From contig JBLDXI010000033.1 in the NCBI GenBank assembly GCA_047495785.1, positions 1,922,001 through 1,986,000 of the forward strand: a stretch of DNA of 64,000 nt, written 5' to 3'. Every line of letters begins with the position of its first letter. Position 1 is the stretch's first letter. Positions 8,932-34,166 of this stretch are shown piece by piece. Source of the stretch: Lepidodermella squamata (Eukaryota > Animalia > Gastrotricha). A program made the translations under genes and the position numbers. The notes under the pieces were generated by a model. The model had not been told where the DNA came from and did not search any database. It worked only from the letters and a program-made list of their open reading frames with translations.

Positions 8932-9540
8932 ATGACAAGCATATTGACGACTTTGAAAGTTCTTCTGGTTGGAGATTCGAATGTCGGAAAATCAAGCATA
9001 TTACTAAGATTCACCGATGATACTTTCGATAATGAAAAATGTCCCACGATTGGAGTGGATTTTAAAGTAAAATTAATATCTCTTAATGGTACCAAAGTTA
9101 AGCTGGCACTTTGGGACACGGCTGGCCAGGAGCGCTTCAGAACACTAACACCTGCCTATTATCGTGGTGCTCAGGGTGTTATTCTTGTTTACGATGTTTC
9201 CAACGCTCAGTCTTTCCGTCAGTTAGAAGAATGGCTGCAAGAAGTCGATCGTTATGCCACTAAAGCGGACATTGTAAAAATGGTCATCGGCAATAAAATC
9301 GATAAAGACTCGAGCGAAAGGGTTGTTAGTCGCGAGGAAGGCCTCAGATTTGCACGCCGTCATCGAATGCTATTTCTAGAGACATCAGCCAAGACCGCAG
9401 TTGGTGTTCAAATGGCTTTCGAAGAACTCGTCGAAAAAATAATCCAGAATCCAACGCTTTGGCAAGCTGATGAAAATTCACAAGATCGCGTAAATGTGAA
9501 CGGACAAAATGAAAATGCATCTTACTGCAACTATTGTTAA
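8932..9540 (+). CDS. RAB18: Rab18 small GTPase (coding region intronless, 202 aa)
   Basis: LTTLKVLLVGDSNVGKSS, RFTDDTFD, TIGVDFKVK, WDTAGQERFRTLTPAYYRGAQG, GNKID, AFEELVEKIIQ and a C-terminal YCNYC prenylation motif. First ATG is at 8932. Confidence 0.96.
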   Translation: MTSILTTLKVLLVGDSNVGKSSILLRFTDDTFDNEKCPTIGVDFKVKLISLNGTKVKLALWDTAGQERFRTLTPAYYRGAQGVILVYDVSNAQSFRQLEEWLQEVDRYATKADIVKMVIGNKIDKDSSERVVSREEGLRFARRHRMLFLETSAKTAVGVQMAFEELVEKIIQNPTLWQADENSQDRVNVNGQNENASYCNYC

Positions 9541-13147: not shown

Positions 13148-16100
13148 TTATTCCAAAAAGCTGACGTTGACAGTAGGTCTCGTTGCTGTGAGTTCAGAGT
13201 CTTCAATAGCTTTGCATGCGATATTGGCTGCGATCTGAGGAAGGTCAACGGGTGAATCGAGCGTTTTGCGAGTGAGAGGAATATGGCGCTCGAAAATTTG
13301 AACCATCAGGCTCACGTAACTTGTGAGAGGTATAACAAAAAGCTGAATGCTTTTGTCGCGAATTGTTCGGAGAATGACGTCTTCAGTTTTTCCGCATGGA
13401 CATCCATCTGGATAGCTGTCACTGGCTTTGCCGTTGTAGAAATGGCGGCCGTGGGGAGGGCTATCTGAGATCAAAATGATCACTTTGGAGCAGCCATTAC
13501 GCCATTGCAACTTCGATGCAGCATCCAAGCCATCAAGAACTGCTTCGCACCCGTCTCCGCCACATTGCGTGCCGATTCTATCGACAAAAGACGAAGCCTG
13601 TTGAGCATCAACGAGTCCACTGCTTTCCATGACCACAGTGTCTTCGTAATGGTCACGATAAGCGACAACTGCAAATCTGATAGACTCAGTCGTGCCGCCA
13701 AGGGCGGCGACCTGGGGAGTTGTTTCGGAAATGATTCGCTTGATTGCAGTTTTGCACGCCGCAATGTATTCGGTCATTGATAACGTCGCATCGATGCAGA
13801 AGCAGAGATCCAATCCGCTGAACGCTGGCCGCGTGAAATCGTGGCAGTCAAACACGTGATCTCGGGCGAGTTCCGACTTTGAGTGCCAAGCTGGCTGGGT
13901 GCAATAGCTAACTTCACGGCCTGCATGTTCGCCACTCGGGCAGTAGAAGTTGCAAAGTTCAACGTCATCGTCTTCAGTCGGCATGGCCCAGTTTTGAACA
14001 CGCCAATAAGTTTGACACAGGTACTTATCGTAGACGACATCAGTATCTGGGTAAAAACGTTCCGAATCACTGCAGTGCAGAACCCCATTGCCATGGACTT
14101 TCTGACCGCATTCGTCGCCACCTCGGCATTCGAGCAGATGGTAATGGGCCCTGCCTTTGCGCTTGCATTGCTGGACACACGTTTCGGCCATCAACACATC
14201 ACCGGGTTCGTAGACGCGAAGCGCCTTCTTACCAGCAACCGTGTCTTCGACAGTGATGCGACCTTCGCTGGTTTTGGCGACGCAGTAACAGAATTCCATG
14301 TTGCGATGAGTGATCGTCAGGTGAGGACCGCGATGGCCGAAGGGTTCACGGCAAAACGATCCGCACTGCATGCAACGCTGGTCGCATTTATGCTCTGAAA
14401 TACACAGAAAAAATGTCTCAAAATGGTGAAATGAGGGCGTATCTTACCTTCTGATTTGCAATTATGGCAGTCATCATGGACCCATTCACCAGGTGGCAAG
14501 ACCTCCATGCACTTCTTGCGGTTGGAAACCGGTCGAATATACTGGTACTCGAGAGGGTTGCGAGGGTGGGCCAGGTAACGGGTCTCCTCGACGTAGTGAA
14601 CCTCGCAAATACCCTCAGCTTCACATTTCTTCGGGCAGCGATGCTCTTTGCCGCACAAATGAAGCTTGACCCTACGAGTTGGACTGGCTGTGATCGAAGG
14701 GTCCATCTCAAAAGTTGGATCGTCGATTTCAATAGCCGTGTCATCATGGTCGTGATCACCAGTGCAAGGCCCGCCGCAGAAAATGCAACGTTTCGGGCAA
14801 TGCTTCTCGTTACAGCGGTGGTCTTCGTGCTTATCGACCAGCGTCTTCGAGCATAAATTAGGGCAGTACTGGCACGTAGCTGTGCATTGATGGGTCGACG
14901 AACATTTGTGACTAGCAGGATTCCCGTGACCAGCGGCGTACATGCAACGGCTAGCACAGGTTTCAGTTTCACACCTCTCGGGGCAATCATGCTGCTCCTT
15001 GTCGCAAATGTGATTGCCATCAGCGTGACCAGCAGGGTGCTTACACGGCATCGATAGGTCATCAACGGCGCAGATAGTGCATATATCGTCACATCCTATA
15101 GCATAAAAAACGATTTAACATCGAAATTGGCAACAGAGATAAGAAACTTACGATGGTTGGTGGTACAGGAACACTCCAGAAGCTTCTCAATTTTAGCCAG
15201 TTCGGCTTTCAACTTGGAATGCTGTTCGTTGGCATCGACCAAAAATCGAAGATGACTCATCCTCGAGATGAGTGAAATTTCCTGAGCTTCAAGCAGGGCA
15301 AGAATCGGCGCGATCACATCGGCAGTTCTAACATCGACGTACGCTTTCAGCTCTTCCTCGATTTCGCAGATTTGGGAAGCAAGGGTCTTTTTGTCAGCTC
15401 GAATCGCTTTGATTTCATCATTTGTTTCGTTGATCTGAACATCGATTTCCAGATAGACCAACAACGCCTCGGCTTCAGACTTCCACTCGTTGAATGCGGC
15501 GGAAATGGCCTCTTTCGCGAACTTGAAGGATTCAGCAATATCGATTTGTCTCTTCAAATCTTCGAGCTTGTTCGACAATGACGAAGCCTTCGTTTTCAAC
15601 AGCATCAACTGGTTTCCGTTAAATTGGGGCAAACGCAGCTTGCTTTCAACATCTTTCAGCAACGTTAAATTTTGTTCAAGATCAGCAACTAGCGTGCTTT
15701 TTTCTTCAGAAATCAGTTCGATTTCGGCTTTTATGATCTGATGATAAGCCTCGTCGTAAACTTCAGTCACAACAGGGACAGGGTTTTCGGCAGATTTCAG
15801 CTGCTGTTCCAAATCAGTTTTCTTCGACTGTAGAGACTCGACTTTCTCCCGGACAGCCTTCAGGGCGGTTTCGGTGACCTCTTCATCATCGGTATCCACC
15901 TTAAATTTCTCATATTTTTCCAGCTTTTCAGTTTGAGTTTGCAGGCGTCGAGTGACACTTTTCAGCTGTTGTTTCAACTCATCAACATTGGCGGAAATTT
16001 GTGATATCTCACTCGGCAAAGGCGACGTAGCTTGTTGCGGAATCATGATGAAGTCCGACGTGTCAGTATTCAGCTCAATTATGCTGCTGTTGTCCTCGGG

Positions 16101-19100
16101 AAACGGTGTAGATGAATCACGGCATTCTGAAGGCTGAGCCGCTTGTAATTTCGATAAACGCACGTCTTCCGCAGCCAAGCGCTTCGATTCATCCACAACA
16201 GCTGCCCAACGCTCGCGAATTTCCGCGATTTTTTCTTCGAAATATCGTTTGCCGTTACGCAGATTCTCGACACACGTTTCGTAGCCTGCTAACTCGTGTC
16301 GGGCAAAAGCGTGTTTCTCCGCAAGTTCGTTTGCCTCAGTAACCCGAGATTTGATCAACTCGTCAATTTCTTCGAGCAATACGGAACAGCTTCGATAACC
16401 GTCGAAGTGACTCTTGAGCTCTGAAAGCTCGATGAACGACTCATTGACCCGCTTATCAACCTGTGTGATTGAGTCGAGCCAAGTAGCACAGGCGCTGAGT
16501 CTCTTTTCAAGCTCCACTGGTAACGAATCAGCTCCAAACAATGTCGTGAAATCGAAAAACGAACGATGTAAACTGCTGGCGAGGGTGTTTTCCAACATCA
16601 GCGGTTTCAAATGTTCGCAAATGCGCAGTAGAAGATGGGCTTTCCGCTCGGGGTAAGGCAGGGCGAAATCAGCTCCACTTTCGTCCTCGTCCAGAGCTGC
16701 TTTCAACTCCGCGAGCTTCGTCATTTTCACAGCCTCTTCGGCTTGTTTTTCACTAGCTAACGATTCAAGGCGGTTGAGGCGTTGCTCCAGCTCGCTTTTC
16801 GAGATTGCATCATTCAACTCCTTCTCATGAGCGAATTTCGATTTCACAACTTCATCGAATTCAATCTTTGCGGTAGCGAGTTCTTCTTCGAATTCGGCTA
16901 TCATGAGCTGGTCATCAGGGGGCAATTTAGTCTTCAGCTCCTTGATTCGTGATTCAATCTTGACTCGATTATCGAAATTGGCCTCGTTATGGCCCTTTCT
17001 TTCAACGCATTTCAGCTGACACTTCGAGCAGTTGTTCAGGCAAAGAGCAAACTTGTTACCAAGGCTTCGGATTTTTTCGAGAACGCCGGTTTTGAAATTT
17101 TTCAGCTCTTCCGCATTGAGAACTCGATCCAATGAGCTAGCTTCGTTCATGGCGAAGTCCTGCAGAATTCCGATTCGCTGTGAGACAAATGTGCCGAGAA
17201 GTTCGTTGAAACCGATCCAAGCTTCGTTGTACTCAGCTTTTGCCACAGCTGGATCACAGGTTCCGAAATATCGGCTCGAAAGTTCGCGAGAGATCGATTC
17301 ATAAGCAATGTTGTGCTCAGATGGCTCTTCCTGTAGCTGGAATGTCACCTCGGTTTGAGCGATTGTAATTTCATCGTCGCAGCCGGGCTTTTTGAAAGTG
17401 CAAACTTCCGAGGTGCTGGTCTTGCTCATGTCACCCCAGGCCGCCATTATACGACTTTCGGCTTGGAAAATTTTAACCCGCTTGACATGCTCATCGCCAG
17501 CCTGCTCGTCGTCACGGTTCACCTGAAGCAGGACGATCTTCAGCGACTGCAGCAGCGTCATAGCATCCGGCCAACGGTTCGGCGGCAAACCGTACGTGCG
17601 GCTCAAATCATCGAAAAACGACTGCCTCAAGTCGTTCAACTCGTTGAGGAAAACATCTCGATTAGTGTAGCTGTTCAAGCACTGCAGGGTGATGGATTTG
17701 CTGAAAAGCCTGGACAAGAACTGATGATCGCCCTTTTGATTAAGCTGGACGATATTTCGCTCGAATTCCTTAGTGGCCTGTTCGTCCTCTTCAGAAGCAA
17801 CATCGCGAACAGCCATGAGGAGGAATCCTCGGAAGTAATTTTTGCCCTTCACTCGATCGACCGTGTTGTTCAGATCAGAGAAAAGTCGGGTCAAATGGCG
17901 GTTGAAAGCAAGGTCTTGGTTCAGAATCGTGATATCGGAAACAGCAGAAAGGACCGTAAGCAACTTGACTTCTTCCAACTCGTTGCGACTGATGCTGAAA
18001 AGACCCTCGCAATCCAGGATGACGAAATCGTGCTCGCTGTTGTCGTGATCGGAAATCAGTCGAGCGTAGCTGATCCAAATACCGTCAGTGCAACGAGTAG
18101 CTGCCACGCTGAACCTGGTTCCAAACAACCGGTTAAGCAGGTAGCTTTTTCCCGAAGATTGGCGGCCGATGATGCTGATGATTTTGATCGGACGGCCGTT
18201 GGCGAAGGTGGAAAGAATGCTCTCGAGATGGCCAAACGTGAGGCGATCCGCAAGATTGGCGATATCAGACGCGACGTCAGTGTTGCTAAACTGATGGCGT
18301 TTCCCATCAACAAGTGGAACGACATTGTTGTCTTCAATCGTGCCTAAAAAAAAATAAAAAATAATGTTATTTGAAATGCGAAGGTTATATCCAACGAATT
18401 AAGGATACATTTTCTATAAAGCCGATTAGGCTAACGATATTAATCAGGTCACTCCCAAAAAATAAATAAAAAACAATAAAATCAAAACGTATTCACTAAC
18501 CAAATTTCACCAAATAATTTCAACTTGTTCAACTTACATATGTGGAGAGGAACACGCGAAAGAAGAATAGCTCTTAGATGGCAGCTTTTCATAACGCAGT
18601 CCGACCAGCTAATCTTGAACTTTTCCAACAACTCGACTGAAATCGTGAGCTTGGGCGAAAAGGTTCGAAGGTACGATCGCAGAGCAACGTCGAATTTTTC
18701 GATTGAAGATCCAGCAGGCAAGACCAGGCGATAATCCACCTGCTCAGGGGATCCAATAAACCGAGCTTGGGGGCCGTATTTCAGGAAACTGGCGTAAACG
18801 ATATCGATAATCGGATTGCCGCGATATATTTCCTTGCTAGATTTCGAGTCGGAAACAGCACGCAGAGAAACATCGGAACAAAGACCGGTGAAAATATAAC
18901 ATGAAACCGCGTCTTTCTTGTCATCGTTTTGTTCGATCGCAGTCAAATAAACATTGGCATTATCGGCGAAGACTTTTACAGCTCGGCAACGCGTTGTGGG
19001 CAGCGATTTCAACAAGGTCAGATTCGGGTCGTACAAATCGATCGATGAGTCACTTCGCAGCACAAAGAAAGACGTGTTTTTCGTCACATGGACGCTTTTG

Positions 19101-21469
19101 TAAATCTCGCCATTTTTCGCTCGCAACTTCAGCTTCTTCAACTTTTTGCCGTTATTTTCACTCGGGCAAAGTTCCATGACGTCACGCTTGATCAAATCGA
19201 CGTTGTAAAGGTTACCTTGCTCAGTAAGCAGTAACATTTCTTTCCTCCCTGGGTAGATAGCAGCTGAAGCGACTTTGCCACGAACCGAATCAGATATATT
19301 GACAGTTTGCTTTTGATTGAACTTTGGAGAGTCGTTTTGAGAAAATTCGAACAGCACAACCTCCTTGTCATCGTAAATTACGCCCATCAGCGCCGTGTCC
19401 GTTGACTTCTCGCCAGCATCGTAGCAGAACAAGAGCCGATCGCTTGACCACGTTTTCACGTTTTTCAACTCGTTGTTGTTAGAAATGGTGACAGTTATGA
19501 CGTTTTGAGGCAAGCGGTCACACTTGAGTGACGCGATGAACAGCTTGCCGTTCCATAGCGCGTAACACGAAATCACGCGAAGACTGCGAATATAGTCATC
19601 TGAAAGCGATTCCTCAGATTTTTTGCCCCAGCTGAATGCTTTGGTATTGAGAATGCTATTCCGCACGGAGACTGGCAAAGCCTTTGCAAATACCTGAAAA
19701 AGAATTTTCACATTTGTACAAAGAATAAACCCAATATTATGAAAGCAAGCAACATTTTGCAGAATTAGAAAATTTTAGGAAACTTCGAGAGCTTACGCGT
19801 ATTCTTAAAAATTTCAAGTGGGTATAAAACAATATTTACCGAGAAAAACCCGATGGGAAAAGTTTTCACGATTCCGGTATTTTTCCGTTCCCGTCGACGT
19901 TCCCGGAACCACAAATTTTATGCAAGCCCAATTATTTAATAAAAAATGAAATAATAATCGATGTTCTTCGGAGATATTTTTGCTTGTTTGCAAAATTCGA
20001 GAGGCATTTTATAAACAAGTTCTTACCTCGCTATTAATTTCCGAACTCCAGTTGAGAGGCGAATACGTCATCGCTTCGTATTCTCCTTCGTTAGTTTGAA
20101 CAACATTGAGAACGCACGGGGTGATTTTTAAAACGCAGCTCGTCTTCTTGTTGCGTTGATTTGAGATGATCGCCGACTTGCATTCAGCAATCAAATCCAG
20201 CGCAGCTTTAGCCACAACTTCACATTTTCTCGTTAGAAGCTCGTGGGATCGGGATTCGTTGTAGATTCGATAAACCTCTTGGCGAAAGGTTTGGAGCGAA
20301 CACTCTCTTCCCAAATCCAATTTTTCGAAAAAGAAGTTTGCAGTGCTATCGACAAAATCGCGCAGAACTAGTTTGGGTTCCCATGAAATACAGTTCTTAT
20401 CGCTGTCATACGAATACGAATTGAGAATTGCATGAAAAAACTGTTCGACCATAAATTCGATCAGAGATTGGGCATTTGGGCCATCTTCATGAAGTTCGCC
20501 GTAGCCAAACATGCCGGTAAAACGATGCCAAAGAGATGGCTTCTGGTTTCGAAGGGAACTATTGACTTTGCCCAAGATCTGCTTCAAGCAGTAAGACAAC
20601 TGACCATCACAATCACGAATTTTTCGCTGAAAGGAGACGTGGTCCGATGCGATTCGTTTCATGCACTCCGGCGAAAGCTCATCGCAGAAAGGTTTCAAGC
20701 TGTCCAAATTAGAGCTCTTCAGCTGGCGAAGCAGAATAGGGGCAATGTTGCTTAGAACAGCGTTCACGTCCAAATGTTTCGCAGTGGCAGCTGAGTCGGG
20801 AACTTCGCAGTGCAGAAAGAATTTACTGCCGTTGTCGTTGAAAACCAGGCGACGCAATGCATTTTCTCCCAGCTCTCGTGTAAGCAAGTCGAACGTAGTT
20901 TTCAGACCCAGTTCTGTTATTTCGCTCAGAGTTTTGCGGTCTTCTAATTTGAACATCGCACGTGAGTGAGCAACCGAGGAGAACGGATTTTTCGGGCCAG
21001 GTGAGAATGAATCCACGATTTCGCGACTTGGACATAGCAAAATAGTGGGGGAGGCATCTTCGAGGTATCGGAATAGCGTGACTAATATATGCTCCTTATT
21101 GAAATTCTCTTGTTGATGCATGAATTCCGCACCAGCATCAACCAACAAAAGAACCTTTGAACCTTTGACCAACGCGTAAAACGAGCCGTATTTCGAATTA
21201 CCAGCCGGTAGAGTGATTTCGAACCGAGATACATCTGCCTCTTCAACTTCTTCGAGATTCGCATCGTTATCTTGAGCAAGAATTTCGTGAGCAGTAGAGA
21301 CGATCGAGTTACGGTCGCCGAATAAAGCCAACACTTTTGCATCCGACAACAAAGCTATTCGGCGTTGCAACTGATTCAAATCGATTAGGTTGACGCCAAC
21401 CTGTTCGAAGGAACTCTCGGCGCTGGTTACCAACTCTCCAGTGAAAGGTTGGTAAATGTGAACGCTCAT
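13148..21469 (-). CDS. giant multidomain GTPase, copy A (~2,561 aa): N-terminal domain, putative beta-propeller, GB1/RHD3-type GTPase, long coiled coil, Cys/His repeats, VWA
   Basis: Exons 21469-20027, 19693-18538, 18343-15152, 15095-14448, 14394-13148; all GT-AG, total 7686 nt, open frame throughout. GTPase motifs G1 GRQSSGKS, G2 RCTDGIW, G3 DCEG, G4 AVRD. VWA motifs DLCFCIDATLSM, RFAVVAYRDH, GGDGCEA, SDSPPHG. Confidence 0.88.
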
Positions 21470-22654
21470 TGTGTTGTAAAAAAAGAGATCTAAAGAGGCA
21501 AATTTTCAATTATGTATTGGCTTTAAGCTTTGTGAGTTTCTGACTCTTAGTATTTCATTTCTACCGCAAAAAGGGAGTTGACCGCTTCGCACAACAAAAT
21601 TTGAACCCATTTCCTGAGAAACGATCCCATTTCAAAAGCCCTAAACATTTTGAGAAGCTTTCCAGATGGCATCGTAAAGGCCCTCAAAAGTTGAACTTTA
21701 GACCAAGAGCCAAATAAACTGTAACCAATGAAAATTAGTCAAGCTAGAGGTTAGTCTCGAAATTGCGTTGTCTAAACTTCGTCTTCAAATGCGCTAATAA
21801 TTTCTGTTCCTGTTTCGTGAAATAAGAAAATAGGTAAAAATAGCGAAGTTCGAACCCCTAAATACCTTACCAGAGTTGAATCGCTACAAATGAAACTGTT
21901 AGCCGAGTTAGCCGGGAAGTCTGTAAAACAAATAAAATAAGAAGAAGTATCTAAATGGAGTCACCTTTCAAATCAGACACGCGCCCTCAAGTGAAGTCAC
22001 ACATGGATGATTACCTATTTGCACCAAAAATGTTGTAACGCCACGTACGTCAGATGGTCATCTGATTCATCAACGGCTTGGAAGCAAAGTAAAAATTATT
22101 CGATTTGTCTTCTTGACCAGAGGTTTTAATGTTTCAAGATTTCTTGATGGTTCAACTAACTGGTCAAAAATGTTCAAAGATAAATTCAAGTAAAAATGCA
22201 AATACATATGATAAACCAATCTGATTATCACAATCGAAGCCCCCAGCTGTAAATGAAACAGCTGACCATATGACACCCACGACGTTACAACCCTTTTCGC
22301 TCGTAGGCAATCAACAGAAATTAAACCCATAGTCTTCGTAGGCTGCTCGTCCCAGGTATTCAAGAACAATGAGAAAGTTATTCACAGCTTGTGTGCACAT
22401 TTGCGATGAAATCGAGTAAATATTGTCTCGATAAAAAGTCTACAAAATAAAAAAACAAGACGCTGTGATTTTATAACTAATGCATGTGTTTTATTATTCC
22501 TTTGAATAGCCGTTGAACATGATATTTGAGAAGCTTGAATAATTAGTGTTGATACTCGAAGTAATTTTTTACATGGAAGGATTTAAGAAAATTAGTAACA
22601 TCATAGTATCAGTTGCATCTGTCATTTCCAGATTCTAAAACTCCGCTCCTGAAG

Positions 22655-25600
22655 TCAGTCGAAGTCCATAGCAGCGGTATTGACTCGACGTGTGGCCGTC
22701 AATTCGGCATCTTCGAGAGCTTTGCAAGCGATGTTTGCAGCCAACTCTGGCAGATCCAGCGCAGATCCAAGTTCTTTTCGAATCAAAGGAATGTGGCCCT
22801 CAAAAACCTTGATCATTCGATTGACGTAGCTTGTCAAAGGAACGACATGGTACTTGATATGTTTGCCTTTCATTTCACCCAAAACCGACGCTTCGTTCAT
22901 ACCACACGGGCAACCACCAGGGTGATCATCGCCTGCATCGCTGAACTGCCGACCATGAGGTGGGGCATCCAAGATGTGAATTAGTAGTCGAGTGCAACTA
23001 TCGCGCCAGTTAAGCTTATTGACAGCATTGAGCCCATCAAGAACCGCCTCAGGTCCATCTCCTCCGCCCATTGCTCCGATCTTATCGACAAAGGCCGAGG
23101 CTTGATCGCTAGTCGTCAATGGGATTGATTGCAGCAAATTAGCTCCATCGCAGTGGTCACGGTAGGCAACGACTGCGAAACGGAGAGAAGAGACATTGCT
23201 GCCGTATCTGGCGACTAGAGGGGCACTTTCAGCGATAATTCGTTTGATGGCGCTTTTACATTGAGCGATAAAGGAGGCCATCGAGCCGGTCGCGTCGAAG
23301 CAGAAACACACGTCCATACCATTGAAAACAGCCTTCGAAAAGTCGTGGCAATCGAACCCATGGTCTTTAGCGAGTTCCGATAGCGTGTGCCAAGCTGGCA
23401 GGGTGCAGAATTGCGGCTCTTTCACATCATGCTCTCCACTTGGACAATAGGCGTTACACAAGTTGATTGAGTCGTCATCCGTTGGCATGGCCCAATTTTT
23501 GATTTGCCAATATTTCTCGCAAAGGTATTTGTCATAGACCACGCTGGTGTCTGGGTAAAATCGTTCGTGTTCTTTGCAGTGAACAACGCCACTTTCGTAC
23601 AACTTTTCGCCACAGTCGTCGCCACCTCGGCATTCGAGCAGATGGTAATGGGCCCTGCCTTTGCGCTTGCATTGCTGGACACACGTTTCGGCCATCAACA
23701 CATCACCCGGTTCGTAGACGCGAAGCGCCTTCTTACCAGCGACGGTGTCTTCGACAGTGATGCGGCCTTCGCTGGTTTTAGCGACGCAGTAACAGAATTC
23801 CATGTTGCGATGCGTGATCGTCAGGTGAGGACTGCGATGGCCGAAGGGTTCACGGCAAAACGATCCGCATTGCATACAGCGCTGATCACATTTATGCTCT
23901 GAAACACAGAAAAAATGTCCCAAAATGGTGAAATGAGGGCGTATCTTACCTTCTGATTTGCAATTATGGCAGTCATCATGGACCCATTCACCAGGTGGCA
24001 AGACCTCCATGCACTTCTTGCGGTTGGAAACCGGTCGAATGTACTGGTACTCGAGTGGGTTTCGAGGGTGGGCCAGGTAGCGAGTCTCCTCGACGTAGTG
24101 AACCTCGCAAATGCCCTCGGCATTACACTTCTTAGGGCAATTATGCTCCTTGCCACATAAGTGAAGCTTAACCCTAGGAACAGGACTAGCTACTGCAGCA
24201 GATGAATCGATCTCGAAAAAGGGATCATCGATTTCGATGGTAGTTTCATCGTGGTCGTGCGCACCAGCACACGGGCCACTGCAGAAAATGCAGCGTTTCG
24301 GGCAGTGTTTTTCGTTACAGCAATGGTCATCATGAGCTTCGATCAGCGAGCTCGTGCAAGTGTTGGGGCAATAACGGCACGTGGCCGTGCACTGGTGGGT
24401 AGACGCGCACTTGTGACCGGCAGGGTTTTCGTGACCATTAGCGTACATGCATCGATTTTTGCAACTTTCGCACTTGAACGGGCAGTCATGCTGCTTCTTG
24501 TCGCAAATATGGCCACCTTCAACGTGCCCTGCTGGGTGTTTACACGGAATTTCGAATCTGTCATCGCAGCAAATGTTGCAAATTTCATCACATAGATGGT
24601 TTGTCGTACAAGCACATTCGAGCAGCTTCTCAATTTTATCCAGCTCGGTTCGCAATTTCACATGCTGTTCATTCGCATCGACCAATTCTTGAAGGCGGAT
24701 AATATCAAAACGAAGCAATTCTTCGCGGCGTTCAACTTCAGCAAACTTCGGAGTAAGTTCGTCGAGATTCTGGGCATCAGATAGCAATTCGACTTCCGAC
24801 TCAAGTTCGCGAGCTTGAGAGGATAGTGTTGATTTCTCGGCTTCTACGGCTTTCAGTTCTTCTTTCAACGACTTCCATTGAACTTCCATCTGCAAGCATT
24901 TGATAATTGCATCAGCTTTTGGCTTCCAAATGATCAAAGCAGCGTCGAAAATATCACGCACGGGCTTCATCGCTTCAATCACGCCAGTATCTCGTTTCAG
25001 ATCATCAAGTTTCCGAGATATGTTCGACACTTTGCCTTTCATCACATTCAACTGATAAATTCCAAAACGAGGAGCAGAAAGTTGCTTCTCAACAGATCGA
25101 AGCTTCGCCGTTTCTTCAGTAACCGAAACCGATAGATCAGATGACTTTTTATTCATTTCGGCCAGTTGAGTCTTGATGCTCTCGTAGTAGGCTCGGTCGA
25201 ACTCCTCCACAAGATCGTGGTGACGTACCGTCAACTTTGACGATGACAACTGGCTCTCGAGCTTCTCCTTTTTATCAGCAAGAGATTTGATTTTCTCCTC
25301 GAGAGCACTGATTCTCAATTCAGTGACTTGCTCTTCATCAGAATCGATGCCATCAGCCTTGTATTTCTTCAATTTCTCGGTTTCTTTCTCAAAGCGTCGA
25401 GTCACAGTGTCGAGTTGCTTCTGCAATTCTTCCTCGGCTAGAACCAGCTGCGGACTTTTCGACGGGGGCGGTTCACAAGGCGCTTCCGATTCTTCAGAAA
25501 CAAGGCAGAAATCCATCAAATCATTTTGAATTCCGTCGATTTCAATGATTCCACTGCTGTCACCGCTACTTGGAATCGTTGGAGTGCCGCTACTGGGGAA

Positions 25601-28600
25601 TCTTTGAGTTCGAGTCGCCTCTAGTTTCGAGAGACGGGCTTCTTCAGCAGAAAGTCGTTCGATTTCCGCATTCAATTTACTGCCATCGTCTCGAGCAGTA
25701 GCAATCGACATTTCCAGCGATAGCTTCTGATTTTTCAAATTTTCAACTGTTGCTACTACGTCGTCCAAATCTTTTTGAGCAGCGTTCAACTTGACAGTGA
25801 CTTCTTGCATCTCATGGTCGTTGCCACCCAGGAGTTTGTCGCATTCCTCAAGGGCACGCCTGCAATTTTGATAGCCTTCGTAGAAACGCTGCCACTCAAT
25901 ATACTCCAGGTAGGGTTCGCAAAGCTCGCGATTCCCGCTATCAGCAATCGCGTCAAACCAGGCAGCGCAATCCAGGAGAAGTTGCTCCAGCTTAACGGGC
26001 GAGGAATCTGGGGACAGGAAAGACGTCAGCTCAGAGAATGACTTCCTCAGACTAGCAACAACGCTCGGTTCTATAATCAAGGGTTGCAGCTGGTTTGTGA
26101 TTTCAGAGAACAAATCTTGTTTTTGTTCAGCAACAGGCATTTCTGTCGACCCTTCGCTGGTCAGCTGTTCGATTTTCGCCGATTTTTCCCGCTCTTCAAT
26201 TTCTTTTTGCAAAAGAACATCACCAATGCCTTTGAGACGAGTCAGCAAATCTTCCTTGGTCTTAGCTCGAGCTATCTCTTTTTCTAGGCTGAGCAGAACT
26301 TCTTTCGCCTCTTCGTGCTGGATCTTAGCGGTCGATAGCTGATCTTCGGTATCGGCCAGCCTCAACTGTAGATCAGCCGGCAGTTTGGATTTCAGCTCTT
26401 TGAGACGCTGCTCCAACTTCGTTCGAGTCTCGAATGTACCCTCGTTGTGGCCCTTTCTTTCGATGCACTTCAGATGACAAGAACTGCACTTGTTGAGGCA
26501 CAGCGCGAATCTAGAACCAAGCCCTCGAATTTTTTCTTCAATTCCAGTCAGGAAATTTTTTCGCTCTTCCAGCGATAGGAGACGGTCCAAGGAGCTGGCT
26601 TCATTCACGGCGTATTGATTCAAGATTTCAATGCGTTGATTCACGTAGCCGACAAGCAATTCGTTGAAACAACTCCACGTTTCGTTGTAAAGAGCCTTGG
26701 AAACAATCGGTTCTCCGCTGCCAAAAAATCGAATTTTCAGCTCTTTGAAAATGGTTTCAAAGGCGATTTCTTCGGAGTGATCATTGGGGTATTGGAAGCA
26801 GATATCTAGTTGGCCAACGCAGATTTCTTCAACGCTGCCTGGTTTGGTGACACGCGTAGCAGCTTCGGTGCCAGTTTTGCTCATGTTACCCCAGGCTGAC
26901 AAAATTCGACCTTCAGCCTGAAGCATTTTGATCCGCTTGACGTGTTCATCGCCAGCTTGCTCGTCGTCTCGGTTGACTTGAAGCAGGACGATCTTCAGCG
27001 ACTGCAGCAAGGTCATAGCATCCGGCCAACGCCTTTCCGGAACTCTGAATTTAAGGCTGTAATCTTCGAAGAAAGACTGGCGAAGGTTGTCAACTTCGTT
27101 CAAGAACACGTCGCGATTCGTGTAGCTATTCAAGCACTGGCGAATAATAGCTCGACTGAACAGCCGTGTCAAAAACTGATGATCACCGCGTTGGTTGAGC
27201 TGGACAATGTTTCGTTCGAACTCTTCAGCGCTTCGCTCGTCGTCCTCGGAAGCCACGTCTCTAATGGCCATCAAAAGGAAGCCGCCAAAGTAGTTCCTCC
27301 CTTTCACTCGGTCGACAGTGCTGTTCAGATCAGCAAACAAACGATTCAAATGACGACTGAAGCTGAGATCTTGGTTCAAAATCGTGATATCGGAAACAGC
27401 AGAAAGGACCGTAAGCAACTTGACCTCTTCCAACTCGTTGCGACTGATGCTGAAAAGACCCTCGCAATCCAGGAGGACGAAATCGTGTTCAGAGTTGTCG
27501 TGATCGGAAATCAGTCGAGCGTAGCTGATCCAAATACCGTCAGTGCAACGAGTAGCTGCCACGCTGAACCTGGTTCCAAACAACCGGTTAAGCAGGTAGC
27601 TTTTTCCCGAAGATTGGCGGCCGATGATGCTGATGATTTTGATCGGACGGCCGTTGGCGAAGGTGGAAAGAACGCTCTCGAGATGGCCAAACGTGAGCCG
27701 ATCCGCAAGATTGGCGATATCCGAAATTACTTCAGCGTTATTGAACTGGTGGCGTTTACCGTCGATCAGCGGGATGACGTTGTTCTCTTCAATGGTACCT
27801 GTAAATTATTAAGATTATAGTTTCCAGATACCTCTCTCAAGGCCGCTAAGTTTCAATTTAGTGATAGTCACAAAAATGCAAGTTCAACCCGTATAGACCT
27901 GACCTTGGATCGAGTAGGGAAAATTATTCTCTCAATGGATGTAACTTTTTCGCCGAATCTAAGTAATTAAAACTGCTACACCCGATGATGTGTGTTTAGG
28001 ACAATATGGGTTGAATACATGAATACAACCAAAATTTACAGCTGAAGCTAATTTACCAAATTAAAACGGTTACCAAAGTACAGCAATTAATTTCAGGAAT
28101 GAGCAATGTGAAAACGTACAGATATGAAGAGGAACGCGCGACAGCAAAATTGACCGCAAGTGTTTGCTGTTGGATTCACAGCTGGCCCATTTTATCGTCA
28201 AGCTCTCCAGCAGCTCAGCAGAAACTCTGCCAGTTAATTTCGTAGAGAAAGTTCGAAGGTAAGACTGGAAGTTCTTGTCGAAAGTTTCGAGTCCGGAAAC
28301 TCCAACAGGTACGACTAGCTTGTAATCAACGATTTCCGGTGAGCCAATGAAACGAGCTTGAGGGCCGTACTTCGTAAAGCTGGCATAGACAATATCGATG
28401 ATAGGGTTCCCACGAAAAGCCTTCTTCGCATCCGCCGAATCATCATCCACATTCTGAAAAGATACGTCAGAACACAAGCCAGGGAAAATGAAACTGGTCG
28501 CAGTGGTTTGCTTCGACTCATTCGAGTTCAAAACGGAAATGTAAATGTTAGCGCTATCGGAGAACAGTTTCATCGCCTGTGAGCGATTGGCCTCGATCGA

Positions 28601-30922
28601 TCTCAGCTTCGAGCAGTTATCATCGTAAAAATCGACGAACGAATCGCTTCTCAAAATGAAAAACGAGTTGTTTTTCGAAACATGAACGCTTTTGTAGAGT
28701 TCCCCATTTTTAGCCATCAGCTTTTTCTTCTCGATTTTCTTACCAGTGTTCAACTTTGGACAGATTTCAGTGAATTCTTTCCTCGCAATATCAACGTGAT
28801 AGAGGTTGCCATACTCGGCCAACATCAGAGCATGTTGACGACTGGGTAGCAGCGCTGCTGAAATGATTCGCCCGCGAACTTGGCCGGGAATGCCTGCAGA
28901 TTGCTTCTCAGCTGGTTTGAAGCCATCATGCTGGGACATTTCGAAGATAGTAATCGCGTCATCGTTAGAAATCACGGCCATCGCAACAGAATCTGTCGAT
29001 TTGTCGCCGCAGTCGAAAGCGAAGGTCAACTTGTCAGTGGACCATGCTTTAACAGCTCGGATTTCTTCTTGCGAAACCGTTGCCATTATAGTTAGGCCGG
29101 GTAACTTCGTGCAGCGAAGAAAAACGATGAACAGTTTACCGCTCCACAGAGCCACGCAATTTAAGATCTTGATGCTTTCGATGTAGCCATCAGGGACCAC
29201 GCCATTGCTCTCACCTCTGTGACAAGAATCTCGCTTGATCGACTTTTGGTAGCTGGTAGGCAGCAATTTGAAAAACGTCTGAAAACAGAAAAATTGGTCG
29301 TTGTAGCTAAATAGAACGCTCGTTTATGAATTTTATGAATTTGATTAATTTCAATTCTCATTTCTATTTACTAGATTTCTCTTTGCAATGCTGAGGGAAA
29401 ATGGCCAAATCGAGTAAAAAATATATTCAAGTTAATGAATTGATGGTAGTAGTTGCTGATAAAAGCCGAATAAGTTTTTTACCTCCGCATTCAATTCAGA
29501 GCTCCAGCTCAAGGACGAGTACGTCACAGCTTCAAATTGACCATCGTTGCTCTGCACGACCTTCATAGCACATGGAGTTAATCGCACCGACGCGGACGGT
29601 CTCTTCGTTTCCCTCTCATTCGAAATTGCCGTTTTGCAGTCTGCCAACATCTTTTTCGCCGCTTCGCCAACCTGAAGGCCGGCAGCGTTAAGAGTTTGGT
29701 GAAAGCGATGTTCGTTCAGTTCGATGTAGACACTTTGTACGACTTCGTGATGGGGCATGTCCCAGGTGTTGCTGTTCACCAGCATAGATGCGGCTTTTTC
29801 GGCGAATTCTCGCAAAATGGCTTTAGAATTCCACTTCACGGTGTAGTTTTCAACGTCATAGGACTCCAAAACTGAATGCACGACATGATTACACAGAAAT
29901 TCTGTCAGCGACTGAATATGGACGCCGTCAATATAGCTTTCCCCGGAGAAGAAATTGATTGCTCTGCTTAAAACACTTTTCTTCTGACGAGCTGCAAATG
30001 AGTCTCGTGATTTCGACAAAACGAAACGAACATCGCTGGAGAATCGATCACAGATACCGCGAATTTTATCGATAAAACGCCGATGCTCGTATTGAATTGC
30101 TTGGCAGCTGTCGCTGGATAGAGACTCAGCAGCAGCTTTCAGGTCACCGCAGATATAGGAAAAATTCAAATTTCTGAACAGCACCGGAATAATTTTGATC
30201 ACAATTTCCTTGGCATCGAAACTTGACGCATTCTTCTTCTCGGACTGGAGCGCGGCGTGCAAGAAATATCGAGAGCAATTTTCGTTGAAAATCAAGCGAT
30301 TTGCAGCATCTTCACCCAATTCTCGAGTGAGCAGATCGAGCGTGGTTCTCAGGGGCAATTCAGCGATTTCCTGGACACTTTTGCAATCCTCCAAACGGTA
30401 CATAGCACGATTGTGAGCGGTTGATGAGAAAGGATTTTTCGGGCCAGGAGAAAACGTATCGATTACTGCAATATCTGGGCAAAGCAGAATTGTCGGAGCC
30501 AAGTCCTCTAGGTATCGAAACAGGGTCACTAAAATGTGCTCTTTGTTGAATGAGTTTTGCTGCCGAAGAAAATCGGGGTCGGCGACTAACATCAACAGCA
30601 GCTTGCTTCCCTTTACCGCTGCGAAGAAACCGCCGTATTTACCATCAGTGATTTCAGGCAAATTCAGTTCTTCTTCCTCGATGTCTTCATCTTCCTCCAT
30701 GCTCTCCTTCTCTCCATCGTTTTCTTCGCTGAGAAGTTTTCGAGCGGTTTCTGTGACAGAATTTCGATCTCCAAACAGAGCAGCGACTTTCAAATTCGGT
30801 AGAGAGCCGATTTCGCGTTGAAGTTGGTTCAAGTCGTGCAAATTCACGGCGACCTGCTCGAAAGAACTTTCAGCACCCGTGACAACCTCGCCGATGAACG
30901 GCCGGTATAAATGTAGCCTCAT
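22655..30922 (-). CDS. giant multidomain GTPase, copy B (~2,563 aa), tandem paralog of copy A
   Basis: Exons 30922-29483, 29278-28120, 27798-23950, 23898-22655; total 7692 nt in frame. Its three introns match copy A in position and phase. Same G1-G3 motifs, G4 AIRD. VWA motifs DVCFCFDATGSM, GGDGPEA, LDAPPHG. Confidence 0.88.
27883..28015. mobile_element. putative MITE in intron 2 of copy B
   Basis: Imperfect 18-bp terminal inverted repeats: ttcaacccgtatagacct (27883-27900) versus the reverse complement of aggacaatatgggttgaa (27998-28015), 15/18 match. The ends resemble piggyBac-type TTAA-CCC termini. Confidence 0.35.
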
Positions 30923-32425: not shown

Positions 32426-34166
32426 TCACAGTTCGCCATGGTCGATAGTATCGGTCCAGAATGAATGATGTTCGATTGGCGGAGGCGGCACACTGCAAGC
32501 CGCCGGAGTCATGAAGTCCATTGCGTATTCGCAGCGATTAGGCTCAGAAACCGAGGTGATTTTGTTCTCGCCACCGCAGAGAATCTTCACGGTGATCGAT
32601 CGAGCCGGTCCATTCCAGCACGACTCGCCATGAGTATATGCTTGATAGGCGTGCTTATTGTCACCTTCCGCCCGCCACGCTTCAAATCGACCAAGATTTG
32701 TCTCGTGGTGGCCATGCTTCTGTTTCTGAGCAGCGCGGTCGAATGGGCACATCTTGTAAGTATACTCACGGTCATCCATCTCGAAACATTGGCCGCGAAG
32801 TGCGTAATACTCGCCGCTAGCACCGAAATCCGTGGCAGTAACGGAAACAAGGTCTGTGTACTCCCGATCAAGATCATCGTAGGCTTTACGAGCCTCCTCG
32901 TAAGTATTACGTGCCTGGGTGGTGAAAACGTGAAATCTTTACTAATTTAAGGAGGATTAATAAAACATACTTGATCTGCAGCTTCCATGAGTTTCTTTGT
33001 TTCCTCTGGGTATTCAGGCATTTTGAACTCTTCATCCTTCTTCTCTTCGTGGTGACGAGTATGATGAGGAGGACGAGTGAATTCGTTCATTCGCTCGTCG
33101 ATTTTCCTCTCCTCGTCTTCATCTTCCTCCTCCTCGCCGATAACAGTCGGTTCTGGCGCGGCTTCAGTTGTTGTCGAGGGTTCTGAGCCCGCTTTACGAT
33201 AGATTTCCTTGATATGAGGCCAGACTTTTTCGATGAAATGAGCGTGGTCAGCAGCACCGTCGGCTGGATCTTCCAGGTTCTCCCGAGCCTCGTCATCTGA
33301 AACAACACCGTCCCCATCAACGTCGAATTCAAGATGGGTTTGAATCTCTTGGAAAGTGATACGTCCATCCTTGTTTGTATCTAGATCTTCGAAAGCCTCC
33401 TCAGTCAAACGCTTCTGTTTTTCCTCTTCGAGGACCTTCTTCGTTTCCTCCCATTCTTTCTGGTGCTTGTCCTTCGCTTCACTTTCCAATTTCTCGACTT
33501 CCTCCTTCGTTTTCTGTAACCGCTGCTTCTCAGCATCAGCAGCCGCTCGTTCAGTTTCGATTTGCTTTAACCGCTCGCGTTTTTCGCCGATTTCGGTTTG
33601 ATATTTGGTGATGTAATCTTTGTACACTTGATGGCCTTGCTCCATGGTAGCCCGCTTCGCTTCGGCGGCTTCACGAGCAATTTTTCCGAGAGATTCGCAA
33701 GAGTTAGGACAGGGCGATGTGCCACCGGGTGTCAATTGCTCGTCACTGCCATCGCAGCAATCGCAAACACCGTCGTCGACGAACATTGAAGAGATATATT
33801 TTGGCCGAAAACCGACGTTAGGGCAGTAAAATTTTCCGTTGGGACAAGCAGAAGTGCCTAAGAATAAATTACAGGTTAATACAAGGGTTCCCATAAGTTC
33901 AAAAATATTCTAACCTGGTTCGTCGGAACCATCGGGACAGTCGCAGTAATCGTCATTAACATGTTCGAATGAGTAACTTTTAGACTTGTCAAAACACTGA
34001 AAAGGTTGGTCAGGCCTATATAGCGACAGTTCTGAAGAAAAACGTTTTCATCATTTGAAGATGATAATAATGATGCCAACTCACTTTGTTGAGCGACTCC
34101 TCGGGGTTTCAGCGATGCATTCGCATACGCTACTACAGCGAGCAACGTCAGTAATTTGAACTTCAT
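32426..34166 (-). CDS. PRKCSH: glucosidase II beta subunit
   Basis: Four exons. Signal peptide plus PRGV; [40 protein letters not shown]; EF-hands DTNKDGRIT and DVDGDGVVS; acidic tract; MRH domain EYTYKMCPF...CWNGPARS...EPNRCEY; C-terminal HGEL. Confidence 0.95.

What the first reader, a model, noticed from the sequence alone, without database searches (positions are those of the whole stretch)
13148..30922. Tandem pair of giant (~2,560 aa) GTPase-coiled coil-Cys/His-VWA proteins: candidate uncharacterised cell-autonomous defence system
Seen: what the ORF track shows as ~8 separate ORFs are two intact spliced genes with identical architecture and intact G1-G4 motifs (GRQSSGKS / RCTDGIW / DCEG / RD). 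I see no signal peptide, TM anchor or CaaX box. Known: these motifs place the GTPase in the GB1/RHD3 clan (GBPs, atlastin/Sey1, GVIN1/URGCP); the GxQSxGKS P-loop is of the Sey1/GVIN type and lacks the GBP/atlastin arginine; GBPs and GVIN1 coat intracellular pathogens. I know of no characterised animal protein with this domain order. Inference: an oligomerising sensor/effector with variable recognition parts (propeller, VWA) and a conserved engine. Duplication with strong divergence fits immune-gene evolution.
Basis: partly seen in the sequence, partly recalled or inferred. Interest (0 to 1): 0.9.

Follow-up and report, generated by a model that had tools for sequence, protein, structure and literature searches.

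The report
Tandem giant GTPase-zinc-VWA gene pair
Two neighbouring, intact animal genes each encode a ~2,560-residue protein that joins a GBP/Sey1/URGCP-type GTPase to a propeller, a long coiled coil, a large zinc-binding array and a metal-dependent adhesion (VWA) domain. They belong to an unstudied family shared with ciliates and rotifers, and the proposed defence role is plausible but untested.

Summary
Two minus-strand genes, A (21469-13148, 5 exons, 2,561 aa) and B (30922-22655, 4 exons, 2,563 aa), are intact, with GT..AG introns throughout. Contigs of run X1, labelled only 'RNA?', skip all three B introns exactly; those of X2 run straight through one of them. A's splicing rests on homology only.

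Domain order: unknown N-terminal region, WD40-like propeller, GBP/Sey1/URGCP-clan GTPase with G1-G4 conserved, about 590 residues of coiled coil, about 410 residues of Cys/His array with no Pfam or PDB sequence match, then a VWA with an intact MIDAS motif.

The family is not animal-specific. It is expanded in ciliates, Anaeramoeba and bdelloid rotifers and is unstudied in the papers I could search. The scan met it before on other DNA of this genome (s1-430962, s1-394034).

New here:
- The duplication is old (dS saturated), but two near-identical tracts show gene conversion, so the 'conserved engine' is partly an artefact.
- Differences between strains in B are mostly synonymous (29:8), which indicates purifying selection.

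A defence role remains inference. Nothing tested shows induction, pathogen binding or positive selection.

The parts
22655..30922 (-). Gene B, 4 exons (30922-29483, 29278-28120, 27798-23950, 23898-22655), 2,563 aa
   Evidence: The frame is intact after splicing. All three introns are skipped in X1 contigs (labelled 'RNA?'). An X2 contig runs through the 321-nt intron and X2 shows no joints. Collinear with 2,500-2,650-aa homologs.
13148..21469 (-). Gene A, 5 exons (21469-20027, 19693-18538, 18343-15152, 15095-14448, 14394-13148), 2,561 aa
   Evidence: The frame is intact after removing four GT..AG introns of 333, 194, 56 and 53 nt. Collinear with B and the homologs. Not tested with reads.
29633..30922 (-). 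B N-terminal region (res 1-430), unknown fold. A counterpart: 21469-20177.
   Evidence: No Pfam, PDB-profile or Atlas match. Only 3 short fragments turned up among 1.84 billion representative proteins. Weakly conserved in full-length homologs over res 1-240. A/B identity 46%.
28481..29173 (-). B WD40-like beta-propeller (res 516-746). A counterpart: 19582-18887.
   Evidence: AF2 model m29fa5727f19f has mean pLDDT 76, with blocks of 80-95 over most of the strands. All 50 listed Foldseek PDB hits are WD40-type or other beta-propellers at E about 1e-8, TM 0.31-0.39. The Atlas feature hits are all propellers.
28121..28435 (-). B alpha/beta linker before the G domain (res 762-866), the most conserved part of exon 2 (GNPIxD, KFGP, SRVPLH). 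A counterpart: 18844-18539.
   Evidence: Alignment A1 has its invariant and near-invariant columns here. Modelled at lower confidence, pLDDT 45-73.
26948..27685 (-). B large GTPase domain (res 905-1150) with G1 at 27622-27599, switch/G2 at 27550-27530, G3 at 27469-27458 and G4 RD at 27268-27257. A counterpart: 18230-17493.
   Evidence: Pfam URGCP_GTPase, GBP and RHD3. Best solved relatives are Sey1p (E 2.5e-9) and GBP5/2/1. The motifs are conserved in at least 85% of 21 family members.
24638..26410 (-). B coiled-coil region (res 1330-1920), preceded by a single Cys knuckle CLNKCSSCHLKC at 26500-26465. A counterpart: 16952-15195.
   Evidence: E+K+Q+L+R is 46% and P+G is low. The heptad score is raised, and there are weak SMC/HMMR-type coiled-coil hits. 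This is the least conserved part, at 36% A/B identity.
23342..24625 (-). B Cys/His array (res 1925-2335, 18.7% Cys+His, tandem C-x3-H-x-C-x3-C-x2-C-x3-C units), interrupted by the 51-nt intron 23949-23899. A counterpart: 15182-13838.
   Evidence: There are 61 invariant columns, mostly Cys or His, in 19 homologs. No Pfam, PDB-sequence or Atlas match. In the AF2 model of homolog P0001, 10-residue blocks have pLDDT of 57-91 and show short beta-hairpin knuckles.
22682..23329 (-). B VWA domain (res 2340-2555) with MIDAS DATGSM (23296-23279), DAPPHG (22969-22952) and an inserted GCPCG knuckle (22915-22901). A counterpart: 13825-13169.
17933..18262 (-). Gene-conversion tract 1 (A coordinates). Covers the P-loop to G3 in both genes.
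   Evidence: About 99% nucleotide identity. Third codon positions are 100% identical over 60 codons, while dS is saturated on both sides.
14124..14603 (-). Gene-conversion tract 2 (A coordinates). Covers Cys/His knuckles plus the shared short intron.
   Evidence: About 97% nucleotide identity including the intron; dS is 0.14-0.20 against saturation elsewhere.

Best explanation
These are two functional tandem paralogs of an uncharacterised, anciently spread eukaryotic family of giant dynamin-superfamily GTPases of the GBP/atlastin/Sey1/URGCP-GVIN branch.

Shown:
- Both reading frames are intact, and B is spliced in the contigs of a run labelled 'RNA?'.
- The domain order is unknown N-terminal region, WD40-like propeller, large GTPase with all nucleotide-binding motifs conserved, long coiled coil, an array of about 60 conserved Cys/His positions (probably more than ten zinc sites), then a VWA with a complete MIDAS motif.
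- The proteins look cytosolic and soluble: no signal peptide, no membrane span, no lipid-anchor box.
- Recent variation in B shows purifying selection.
- The duplication is old and has been patched by gene conversion.

Inferred mechanism: GTP binding drives head-to-head pairing of the G domains, as in GBPs, atlastin and Sey1. The long coiled coil acts as a stalk. The propeller and the metal-dependent VWA site hold protein ligands, and the zinc array forms a rigid platform. Together these would make a nucleotide-switched, multivalent scaffold or coat.

Inferred role: most likely cell-autonomous conflict or defence. The arguments are kinship with immune GTPases, lineage-specific expansions, tandem arrays and fast-evolving peripheral parts. 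This step is a guess, which I put at about 0.4 taken alone.
For: - Gene models and splicing.
- Collinear full-length homologs.
- GTPase clan and motifs.
- Propeller.
- VWA and MIDAS.
- Zinc array conservation.
- No membrane or secretion signals.
- Purifying selection in B: 29 syn: 8 nonsyn.
- Gene conversion.
- Multi-copy and tandem elsewhere. P0062 and P0057 lie on one contig. Tetrahymena paralogs carry neighbouring locus tags. Earlier scan notes report other loci in this genome.
- A and B are each other's closest relatives, then P0001, within a clade that also holds bdelloid and Paramecium proteins.
- GVIN1, a giant GTPase of the same clan, coats cytosolic bacteria and is predicted to pair through its LG domains (bioRxiv 10.1101/2025.03.24.645074).
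Against: - There is no direct functional evidence: no data on induction, localisation or biochemistry.
- Similarity to vertebrate URGCP/GVIN is weak (E 2e-5 over 8% of the query), and the best solved relative of the G domain is the ER fusogen Sey1, not an immune protein.
- Recent variation shows purifying, not diversifying, selection.
- Expression of A is untested.
- X1 is only labelled 'RNA?'. That it is RNA is inferred from its intron-less contigs and its zero depth in the 27800-27999 bin inside the 321-nt intron.
- PADLOC gave only one weak hit, mad8 at E 1e-4.
- The folds of the N-terminal region and the zinc array remain unassigned.
Confidence: 0.55

Rival explanations
1. Housekeeping membrane- or organelle-remodelling GTPase. 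The proteins would tether or shape internal membranes (ER, phagosomes, secretory organelles), as Sey1 and atlastin do, with the VWA and propeller docking onto organelle proteins.
For: The closest solved G domain is Sey1p, and the P-loop is of the Sey1/RHD3 type. One homolog is auto-named 'protein sey1' in Anaeramoeba. All organisms named as carriers are phagotrophs.
Against: There is no transmembrane segment or amphipathic tail, which Sey1 and atlastin need. RHD3_GTPase scores below its Pfam cutoff, 38-39 bits against 42.4. The phyletic pattern is patchy, with many paralogs per genome and very fast-evolving N-terminal and coiled-coil parts. That is not the pattern of a core trafficking factor.
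Confidence: 0.15
2. A GTP-switched zinc-array/VWA platform acting in ubiquitin/proteasome or nucleic-acid surveillance. It would resemble NFX1/ZNFX1-type zinc arrays and the VWA plus zinc-finger subunits of TFIIH (p44, p34) or Rpn10, rather than a coat on pathogens.
Against: Pfam zf-NF-X1 was not reported at E<=5 for gene B or at E<=1 for 19 homologs. VWA neighbours of every kind score alike, with integrin beta highest. No RING, helicase or nuclease domain was detected.
Confidence: 0.15
3. Origin rather than function: the genes descend from a horizontal transfer from a protist (ciliate-like) donor into small spiralian animals and acquired introns afterwards.
For: Among named animal hits, only bdelloid rotifers carry the family. 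The remaining named hits are ciliates, Anaeramoeba, one fern record and marginal fish URGCP-like proteins. In the tree, the window pair plus P0001, the bdelloid clade and the Paramecium clade share one supported clade (SH-aLRT 98) with unresolved order. The closest homolog P0001 and the Rotaria P0089 gene are intronless, and A has an intron that B lacks. Earlier follow-up s1-430962 reached the same view on another locus.
Against: The tree is unrooted and quick, and branching inside the clade is unresolved. Ancient presence with many losses is not excluded. The flanking genes are ordinary animal genes, and base composition is not distinctive. No relative turned up in viral contigs.
Confidence: 0.4
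4. Decaying pseudogenes, or an ORF-finder artefact rather than real genes.
For: Gene A shows frame breaks in the raw ORF track.
Against: Each break coincides with a canonical short GT..AG intron, and removing them gives a full frame. One of these introns is the same one seen spliced in B. Conserved motifs and all family-invariant Cys/His are kept in both genes. Strain differences in B are mostly synonymous.
Confidence: 0.03

Closest known systems
GVIN1 / URGCP (vertebrate 'very large inducible' giant GTPases)
   Same: Giant cytosolic proteins with a GBP-clan large GTPase domain. The Pfam URGCP_GTPase match is just above its cutoff. The P-loop is of the GxQSxGKS type. UniProt's automatic label for homologs is 'VLIG-type G domain'.
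   Different: GVIN1 is described as an N-terminal domain, two LG domains, a helical linker and a C-terminal domain in 1,808 aa. It has no propeller, no roughly 590-residue coiled coil, no zinc array and no VWA. Sequence similarity is confined to about 100 residues around G1-G3 (HMM positions 182-286 of 396; E 2e-5 to a fish URGCP-like protein).
Sey1p / RHD3 / atlastin (ER-fusing dynamin-like GTPases)
   Same: Sey1p is the best solved sequence relative of the G domain (5ca8, E 2.5e-9). The P-loop and switch regions align, and the G4 motif is of the RD type.
   Different: The window proteins have no transmembrane hairpin or amphipathic tail. RHD3_GTPase scores below its cutoff. They are about three times larger and have unrelated flanking domains.
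Guanylate-binding proteins (GBP1/2/5)
   Same: The Pfam GBP domain scores above its cutoff. GBP5, GBP2 and GBP1 are aligned at E 1e-7 to 1e-5. In both, a helical region follows the G domain.
   Different: The P-loop arginine of GBPs is absent (GLYRTGKS in GBP5 against GRQSSGKS here). There is no CaaX box, and the C-terminal modules are entirely different.
Unnamed 'VLIG-type G domain / VWFA domain-containing' proteins of bdelloid rotifers and ciliates (e.g. Rotaria magnacalcarata P0089, Adineta steineri P0007, Paramecium, Tetrahymena TTHERM_00807920)
   Same: They have the same full-length architecture and all the signature motifs. P0007 covers 99% of the query at 27% identity, and P0089 covers 98% of the C-terminal region at 34% identity. 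The alignment is collinear from the first Met for P0001 and from within the first 10-25 residues for P0002 and P0004.
   Different: These proteins are only predicted and none has been studied. Identity to them is 27-45%. The window genes carry 3-4 introns, whereas the P0001 and Rotaria P0089 genes have none.
Alpha-kinase/VWA proteins (VwkA-like) carrying the same VWA_4 subtype
   Same: The VWA is of Pfam subtype VWA_4. Atlas structural neighbours align with model residues 262/270/298-620, which covers the VWA plus roughly 110-150 residues before it.
   Different: TM-scores are low (0.35-0.37 by query), so this is a lead only. Those proteins have a kinase instead of a GTPase.

Membership tests
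Dynamin superfamily, GB1/RHD3-type (GBP/atlastin/Sey1/URGCP) large GTPases | G1 P-loop GxxxxGK[ST], G3 DxxG and G4 (T/A)xRD in order, and a Pfam clan match above the curated cutoff | tested here: met
   GRQSSGKS, DCEG and AIRD/AVRD are present in both genes. GBP scores 36.5 bits against a cutoff of 21.1, and URGCP_GTPase 56 against 55. Sey1p and GBPs are the top PDB sequence hits.
Dynamin superfamily, GB1/RHD3-type large GTPases | GTP binding and hydrolysis, and nucleotide-dependent G-domain dimerisation | not testable with these tools
   This needs biochemistry. Only conservation of the motifs is shown.
Sey1/RHD3/atlastin ER fusogens | C-terminal transmembrane hairpin anchoring the protein in the ER membrane | tested here: not met
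   No hydrophobic span lies outside folded beta-strands. The top 19-residue Kyte-Doolittle score is 1.7-1.8, within the propeller or VWA. RHD3_GTPase is below its cutoff.
GBP (guanylate-binding proteins) | P-loop arginine (GxxRxGKS) acting as the internal arginine finger, and a C-terminal helical GED-like domain, often with a CaaX box | tested here: not met
   The P-loop has Ser at that position. There is no CaaX box. The C-terminal part is coiled coil, zinc array and VWA.
GVIN/URGCP (VLIG) giant GTPases | Full URGCP-type GTPase region (Pfam PF25683, 396 positions) together with the accompanying URGCP/GVIN-specific domains | tested here: inconclusive
   Only HMM positions 182-286 match, at 56 bits against a cutoff of 55. 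The fish URGCP-like hits carry PF26773, PF26772, PF25974 and PF25496, none of which is found here.
VWA domain with MIDAS | Rossmann-like VWA fold with the DxSxS...T...D metal-ion-dependent adhesion site | tested here: met
WD40-like beta-propeller | Circular array of four-stranded blades | tested here: inconclusive
   The model has about 21 strands at high pLDDT, and all 50 listed Foldseek hits are WD40-type or other propellers. TM is only 0.31-0.39, there is no Pfam WD40 match, and the blade count and ring closure were not determined. Strands from the end of exon 1 may contribute.
NF-X1-type zinc finger array | Match to the NF-X1 finger profile (Pfam zf-NF-X1) | tested here: not met
   No zf-NF-X1 hit at E<=5 for gene B or at E<=1 in 19 homologs. 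The resemblance of the C-x3-H-x-C-x3-C core is recalled from memory only.

The most novel reading that the evidence does not exclude
The family is an ancient eukaryotic cell-autonomous defence machine, older than and distinct from vertebrate GBP/GVIN coats. In this reading a GTP-driven giant scaffold uses a propeller and a MIDAS-VWA to seize invader or danger ligands and a zinc array to build a rigid coat or signalling platform. It would be kept and tandemly expanded in bacterivorous protists and a few small animals, possibly moving between them by gene transfer.
Probability: 0.25. Interest if true: 0.8.

Novelty: new variant of a known kind. Interest (0 to 1): 0.55.

Why it matters
Giant GTPases of the GBP/GVIN clan have only recently been shown to coat cytosolic bacteria in human cells, and their deep history is unknown. 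This locus shows that an animal keeps, apparently expresses and selectively maintains two copies of a very different giant relative, one that adds a propeller, a long stalk, a large zinc array and a MIDAS-VWA.

The same architecture is abundant in ciliates and rotifers, yet I found no study of it. Tetrahymena and Paramecium are experimentally tractable. That makes the question of what these GTPases did before vertebrate interferon immunity directly testable.

The roughly 410-residue zinc array also has no Pfam family or solved relative by sequence, so it is a candidate new domain.

This is the second or third locus of the family in this genome, so the present window adds detail (a tandem pair, gene conversion, splicing evidence) rather than a first discovery.

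Tried and rejected
- **N-terminal 480 residues.** Pfam, NCBIfam, PADLOC, a PDB profile search and the Atlas features search found nothing usable. An exhaustive phmmer over 1.84 billion representative proteins found three short fragments only.
- **Zinc array.** Pfam on gene B and on 19 homologs, a PDB profile search and the Atlas features search were all blank. Structure searches of the joint zinc-array plus VWA model were filled by VWA hits, so the array's fold is untested.
- **Giant-virus origin.** A scan of viral contigs with two family patterns found no relative.
- **Orthologs for dN/dS.** A scan of metagenome contigs with B's last exon found none, so no per-domain dN/dS could be computed. 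dN/dS between A and B is meaningless because dS is saturated.
- **Literature.** Searches for VLIG plus VWA, GVIN/URGCP in invertebrates, vWA plus GTPase in ciliates, rotifer VLIG, a Tetrahymena locus tag, and the bdelloid infection transcriptome paper found no description of the family.
- **Pseudogene reading of gene A.** Rejected, because every frame break is a canonical intron.
- **Host identity.** The neighbouring glucosidase II beta gene is closest to mollusc and nemertean orthologs (42-45%), and bdelloids reach only 34%. I therefore could not confirm the earlier 'probably a rotifer' guess and call the host a spiralian-type invertebrate.

Full report
**1. What is in the sequence**

Between 13148 and 30922 the mechanical ORF list shows about eight large minus-strand ORFs. 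Reading the junctions shows short canonical introns. Joining the ORFs at GT..AG sites yields two complete frames.

- Gene B: exons 30922-29483, 29278-28120, 27798-23950 and 23898-22655, 2,563 aa, with introns of 204, 321 and 51 nt.
- Gene A: exons 21469-20027, 19693-18538, 18343-15152, 15095-14448 and 14394-13148, 2,561 aa, with introns of 333, 194, 56 and 53 nt.

The 51-nt intron of B is in frame and stop-free. That is why the ORF finder read straight through it. Its 53-nt counterpart in A breaks the frame, which made A look interrupted. The 56-nt intron of A has no counterpart in B.

**2. Transcript evidence**

Two public runs hold the stretch. I laid their contigs on 23800-29799.

- Run X1 is only labelled 'RNA?' and its library is not on record. 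Its contigs skip exactly 29482-29279, 28119-27799 (the tool gives 27794/28116 with 'cut +4') and 23949-23899, each with CT..AC on the + strand. X1 has zero depth in the 27800-27999 bin inside the 321-nt intron.
- Run X2 has a contig (27643-28243) that runs unbroken through the 321-nt intron, and it shows no joint at any of the three.
- No further joint was reported in the 6 kb.

I read this as evidence that B is transcribed and spliced as modelled. Only one read-laying run was allowed, so A's splicing is inferred. The inference rests on canonical sites, a restored frame, an intron shared with B, and collinearity with homologs.

**3. Domain anatomy (B numbering)**

- **Res 1-430, unknown region.** There is no match in Pfam, NCBIfam, PADLOC, a PDB profile search or the Atlas. 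Only three fragments turned up among 1.84 billion representative proteins. Full-length homologs align weakly over res 1-240, with an LxD...CP motif.
- **Res 516-746, propeller-like.** The AF2 model has mean pLDDT 76, with blocks of 80-95 over most of the strands, and consists of about 21 beta-strands. Its 50 listed Foldseek PDB matches are all WD40-type or other beta-propellers (E about 1e-8, TM 0.31-0.39). The language-model neighbours are all propellers too. The propeller reading is supported at fold level, but the blade number is open.
- **Res 762-866, alpha/beta linker.** This is the best conserved part of exon 2.
- **Res 905-1150, large GTPase.** URGCP_GTPase scores 56 bits (cutoff 55), GBP 36.5 (cutoff 21.1) and RHD3_GTPase 38-39 (cutoff 42.4). 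The best solved relatives are Sey1p at E 2.5e-9, then GBP5, GBP2 and GBP1. G1 is GRQSSGKS, followed by RCTDGIW, DCEG and RD. All are conserved in at least 85% of a 21-member family alignment. The P-loop type GxQSxGKS is shared with Sey1 and a fish URGCP-like protein, and it lacks the GBP arginine.
- **Res 1151-1290, helical region,** ending in one Cys knuckle at 1300-1311.
- **Res 1330-1920, coiled coil**.
- **Res 1925-2335, Cys/His array.** It is 18.7% Cys+His and built from tandem C-x3-H-x-C-x3-C-x2-C-x3-C units. Nineteen homologs share 61 invariant columns. No Pfam, PDB-sequence or Atlas match was found. The AF2 model of the homolog P0001 (overall pLDDT 81.5) has 10-residue blocks of 57-91 across the array and shows chains of short hairpins plus a small alpha/beta subdomain.

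There is no signal peptide, membrane span or CaaX box.

**4. The two copies compared**

Overall amino-acid identity is 56%, and it is strongly mosaic:

| Region | A/B identity |
|---|---|
| N-terminal region | 46% |
| Propeller | 47% |
| G domain | 87% |
| Coiled coil | 36% |
| Zinc array | 80% |
| VWA | 57% |

Synonymous divergence is saturated almost everywhere, so the duplication is old. Two tracts are nearly identical at the DNA level. The first is A 18262-17933, from the P-loop to G3, where third codon positions are 100% identical. The second is A 14603-14124, zinc knuckles including the shared intron, at about 97% identity. An intron would not stay identical under protein-level selection, so I read both tracts as gene conversion between the neighbours.

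As a substitute I classified the differences between the window and the two runs inside B. They split 29 synonymous to 8 non-synonymous (X2-fixed 19:7, polymorphic 10:1). That indicates purifying selection in the recent past and gives no sign of diversifying selection.

**5. Relatives**

Searches with the large ORF of B found 84 proteins from its N-terminal words and 13, nine of them new, from its C-terminal part. Homologs of 2,300-2,850 aa occur in these sources:
- unnamed metagenomic contigs; the best is P0001 (39-45% identity, one intronless ORF)
- bdelloid rotifers (Adineta steineri, Rotaria magnacalcarata, R. socialis, R. sp. Silwood2)
- ciliates (Paramecium, Tetrahymena)

Shorter members of 1,500-2,150 aa come from Stylonychia, Stentor, Blepharisma, Anaeramoeba and a fern record. 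Fish URGCP-like proteins appear only at E about 1e-5.

The closest homologs align from the start: P0001 from the first Met, P0002 and P0004 from within the first 10-25 residues.

A quick maximum-likelihood tree of the C-terminal 600 residues (60 rows; IQ-TREE with SH-aLRT; the midpoint root is for drawing only) puts A and B as sisters (100), then P0001 (100). These sit inside a supported clade (98) with the bdelloid clade, the Paramecium clade and two environmental groups, and the order inside that clade is unresolved.

Tandem copies recur elsewhere. P0062 and P0057 lie 4.7 kb apart on one contig. Three Tetrahymena malaccensis paralogs have neighbouring locus tags on one contig, and two T. thermophila paralogs share a scaffold. 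The Rotaria P0089 gene is a single intronless copy among ordinary animal genes.

**6. Host and context**

The flanking genes are of animal type: Fn3/DSCAM-like, Fringe, SMC, Rab, SAM and glucosidase II beta. The glucosidase II beta exon is closest to two unnamed sequences (63-67%), then molluscs and a nemertean (42-45%), with bdelloids at only 34%. The host is therefore a spiralian-type invertebrate and not a bdelloid. I could not confirm the earlier notes' 'probably a rotifer'.

**7. Earlier findings of this scan**

The family was met before on other pieces of this genome. s1-394034 is a first-reader note. s1-430962 has a follow-up that described a 2,546-residue GTPase-zinc-vWA gene of 'rotifer/ciliate type' with a likely old transfer and an unproven defence role. 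My independent tests agree with that follow-up. They add the tandem pair, the splicing evidence, the gene conversion, the propeller model and the polymorphism count.

**8. Mechanism and function**

Shown: an intact, selected, apparently cytosolic giant protein with a complete GTPase motif set, a complete MIDAS motif and a large conserved Cys/His array.

Inferred from the established behaviour of GBP, atlastin and Sey1 (and predicted for GVIN1): GTP-dependent G-domain pairing that drives assembly. The coiled coil would act as a stalk, and the propeller and VWA would act as ligand-binding ends.

The role is not shown. A defence or conflict role is the best guess. Arguments for it are clan kinship, expansions, tandem arrays and fast-evolving peripheral parts. 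Against it, the closest solved G domain is a housekeeping fusogen, recent selection is purifying, and no expression or infection data exist. Rivals are a membrane-remodelling role (weakened by the lack of any membrane anchor) and a ubiquitin or nucleic-acid surveillance platform (a resemblance of the zinc array to NF-X1 fingers, not confirmed by the profile). A horizontal origin from protists is plausible but unresolved.

**9. Verdict**

This is a new variant within the known dynamin-superfamily giant GTPases and belongs to an unstudied but already sequenced family. The family is neither animal-specific nor new to this scan, and every functional claim remains inference.

Noticed in passing
window 18262-17933 / 27717-27388 and 14603-14124 / about 24100-23625: Two gene-conversion tracts between the tandem paralogs, at about 99% and 97% DNA identity. 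The second includes the shared short intron. dS is saturated in the surrounding sequence.
   Followed up: yes
window 15151-15096: Gene A has a 56-nt GTAAGT..CTATAG intron that gene B lacks at the same codon. The closest homolog P0001 and the Rotaria P0089 gene have no introns at all, so introns have been gained or lost since the duplication.
   Followed up: partly
window 17355-18347 (+) and 26942-27820 (+): Long antisense ORFs of 330 and 292 aa lie opposite the GTPase exon in both genes. They are probably a by-product of codon composition and the conversion tract. I did not examine them.
   Followed up: no
window 26298-26504: Both runs hold two alternative contigs here, differing at 10 sites (9 synonymous). 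These could be two haplotypes or a cross-mapping paralog from elsewhere in the genome.
   Followed up: partly
window 32947-33894 (-): The glucosidase II beta exon is closest to mollusc and nemertean orthologs (42-45%), while bdelloid rotifers reach only 34%. Two unnamed database proteins reach 63-67%. The host looks like a spiralian invertebrate whose proteome is not in the databases.
   Followed up: partly
L002 523-5337 and 10001-14824: An environmental contig (JGI 3300045971) carries its own same-strand tandem pair of a shorter subfamily (1,604 and 1,607 aa) for which no VWA Pfam family is on record.
   Followed up: partly
P0001 residues about 2290-2646 (model mffe0567e9715, residues 262-620): ESM-Atlas structural neighbours with the same VWA_4 subtype are alpha-kinase/VWA (VwkA-like) proteins. 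The alignment extends roughly 110-150 residues upstream of the VWA, which hints at a shared pre-VWA subdomain. TM-scores are low, so this is only a lead.
   Followed up: no
window 8920-9540 (+), 50119-52335 (+), 53369-54319 (-), 59060-61072 (-): The neighbouring genes are ordinary animal genes: a Rab/Ras GTPase, an Fn3/DSCAM-like protein, a Fringe-like glycosyltransferase and an SMC protein. None is related to the giant GTPases.
   Followed up: partly
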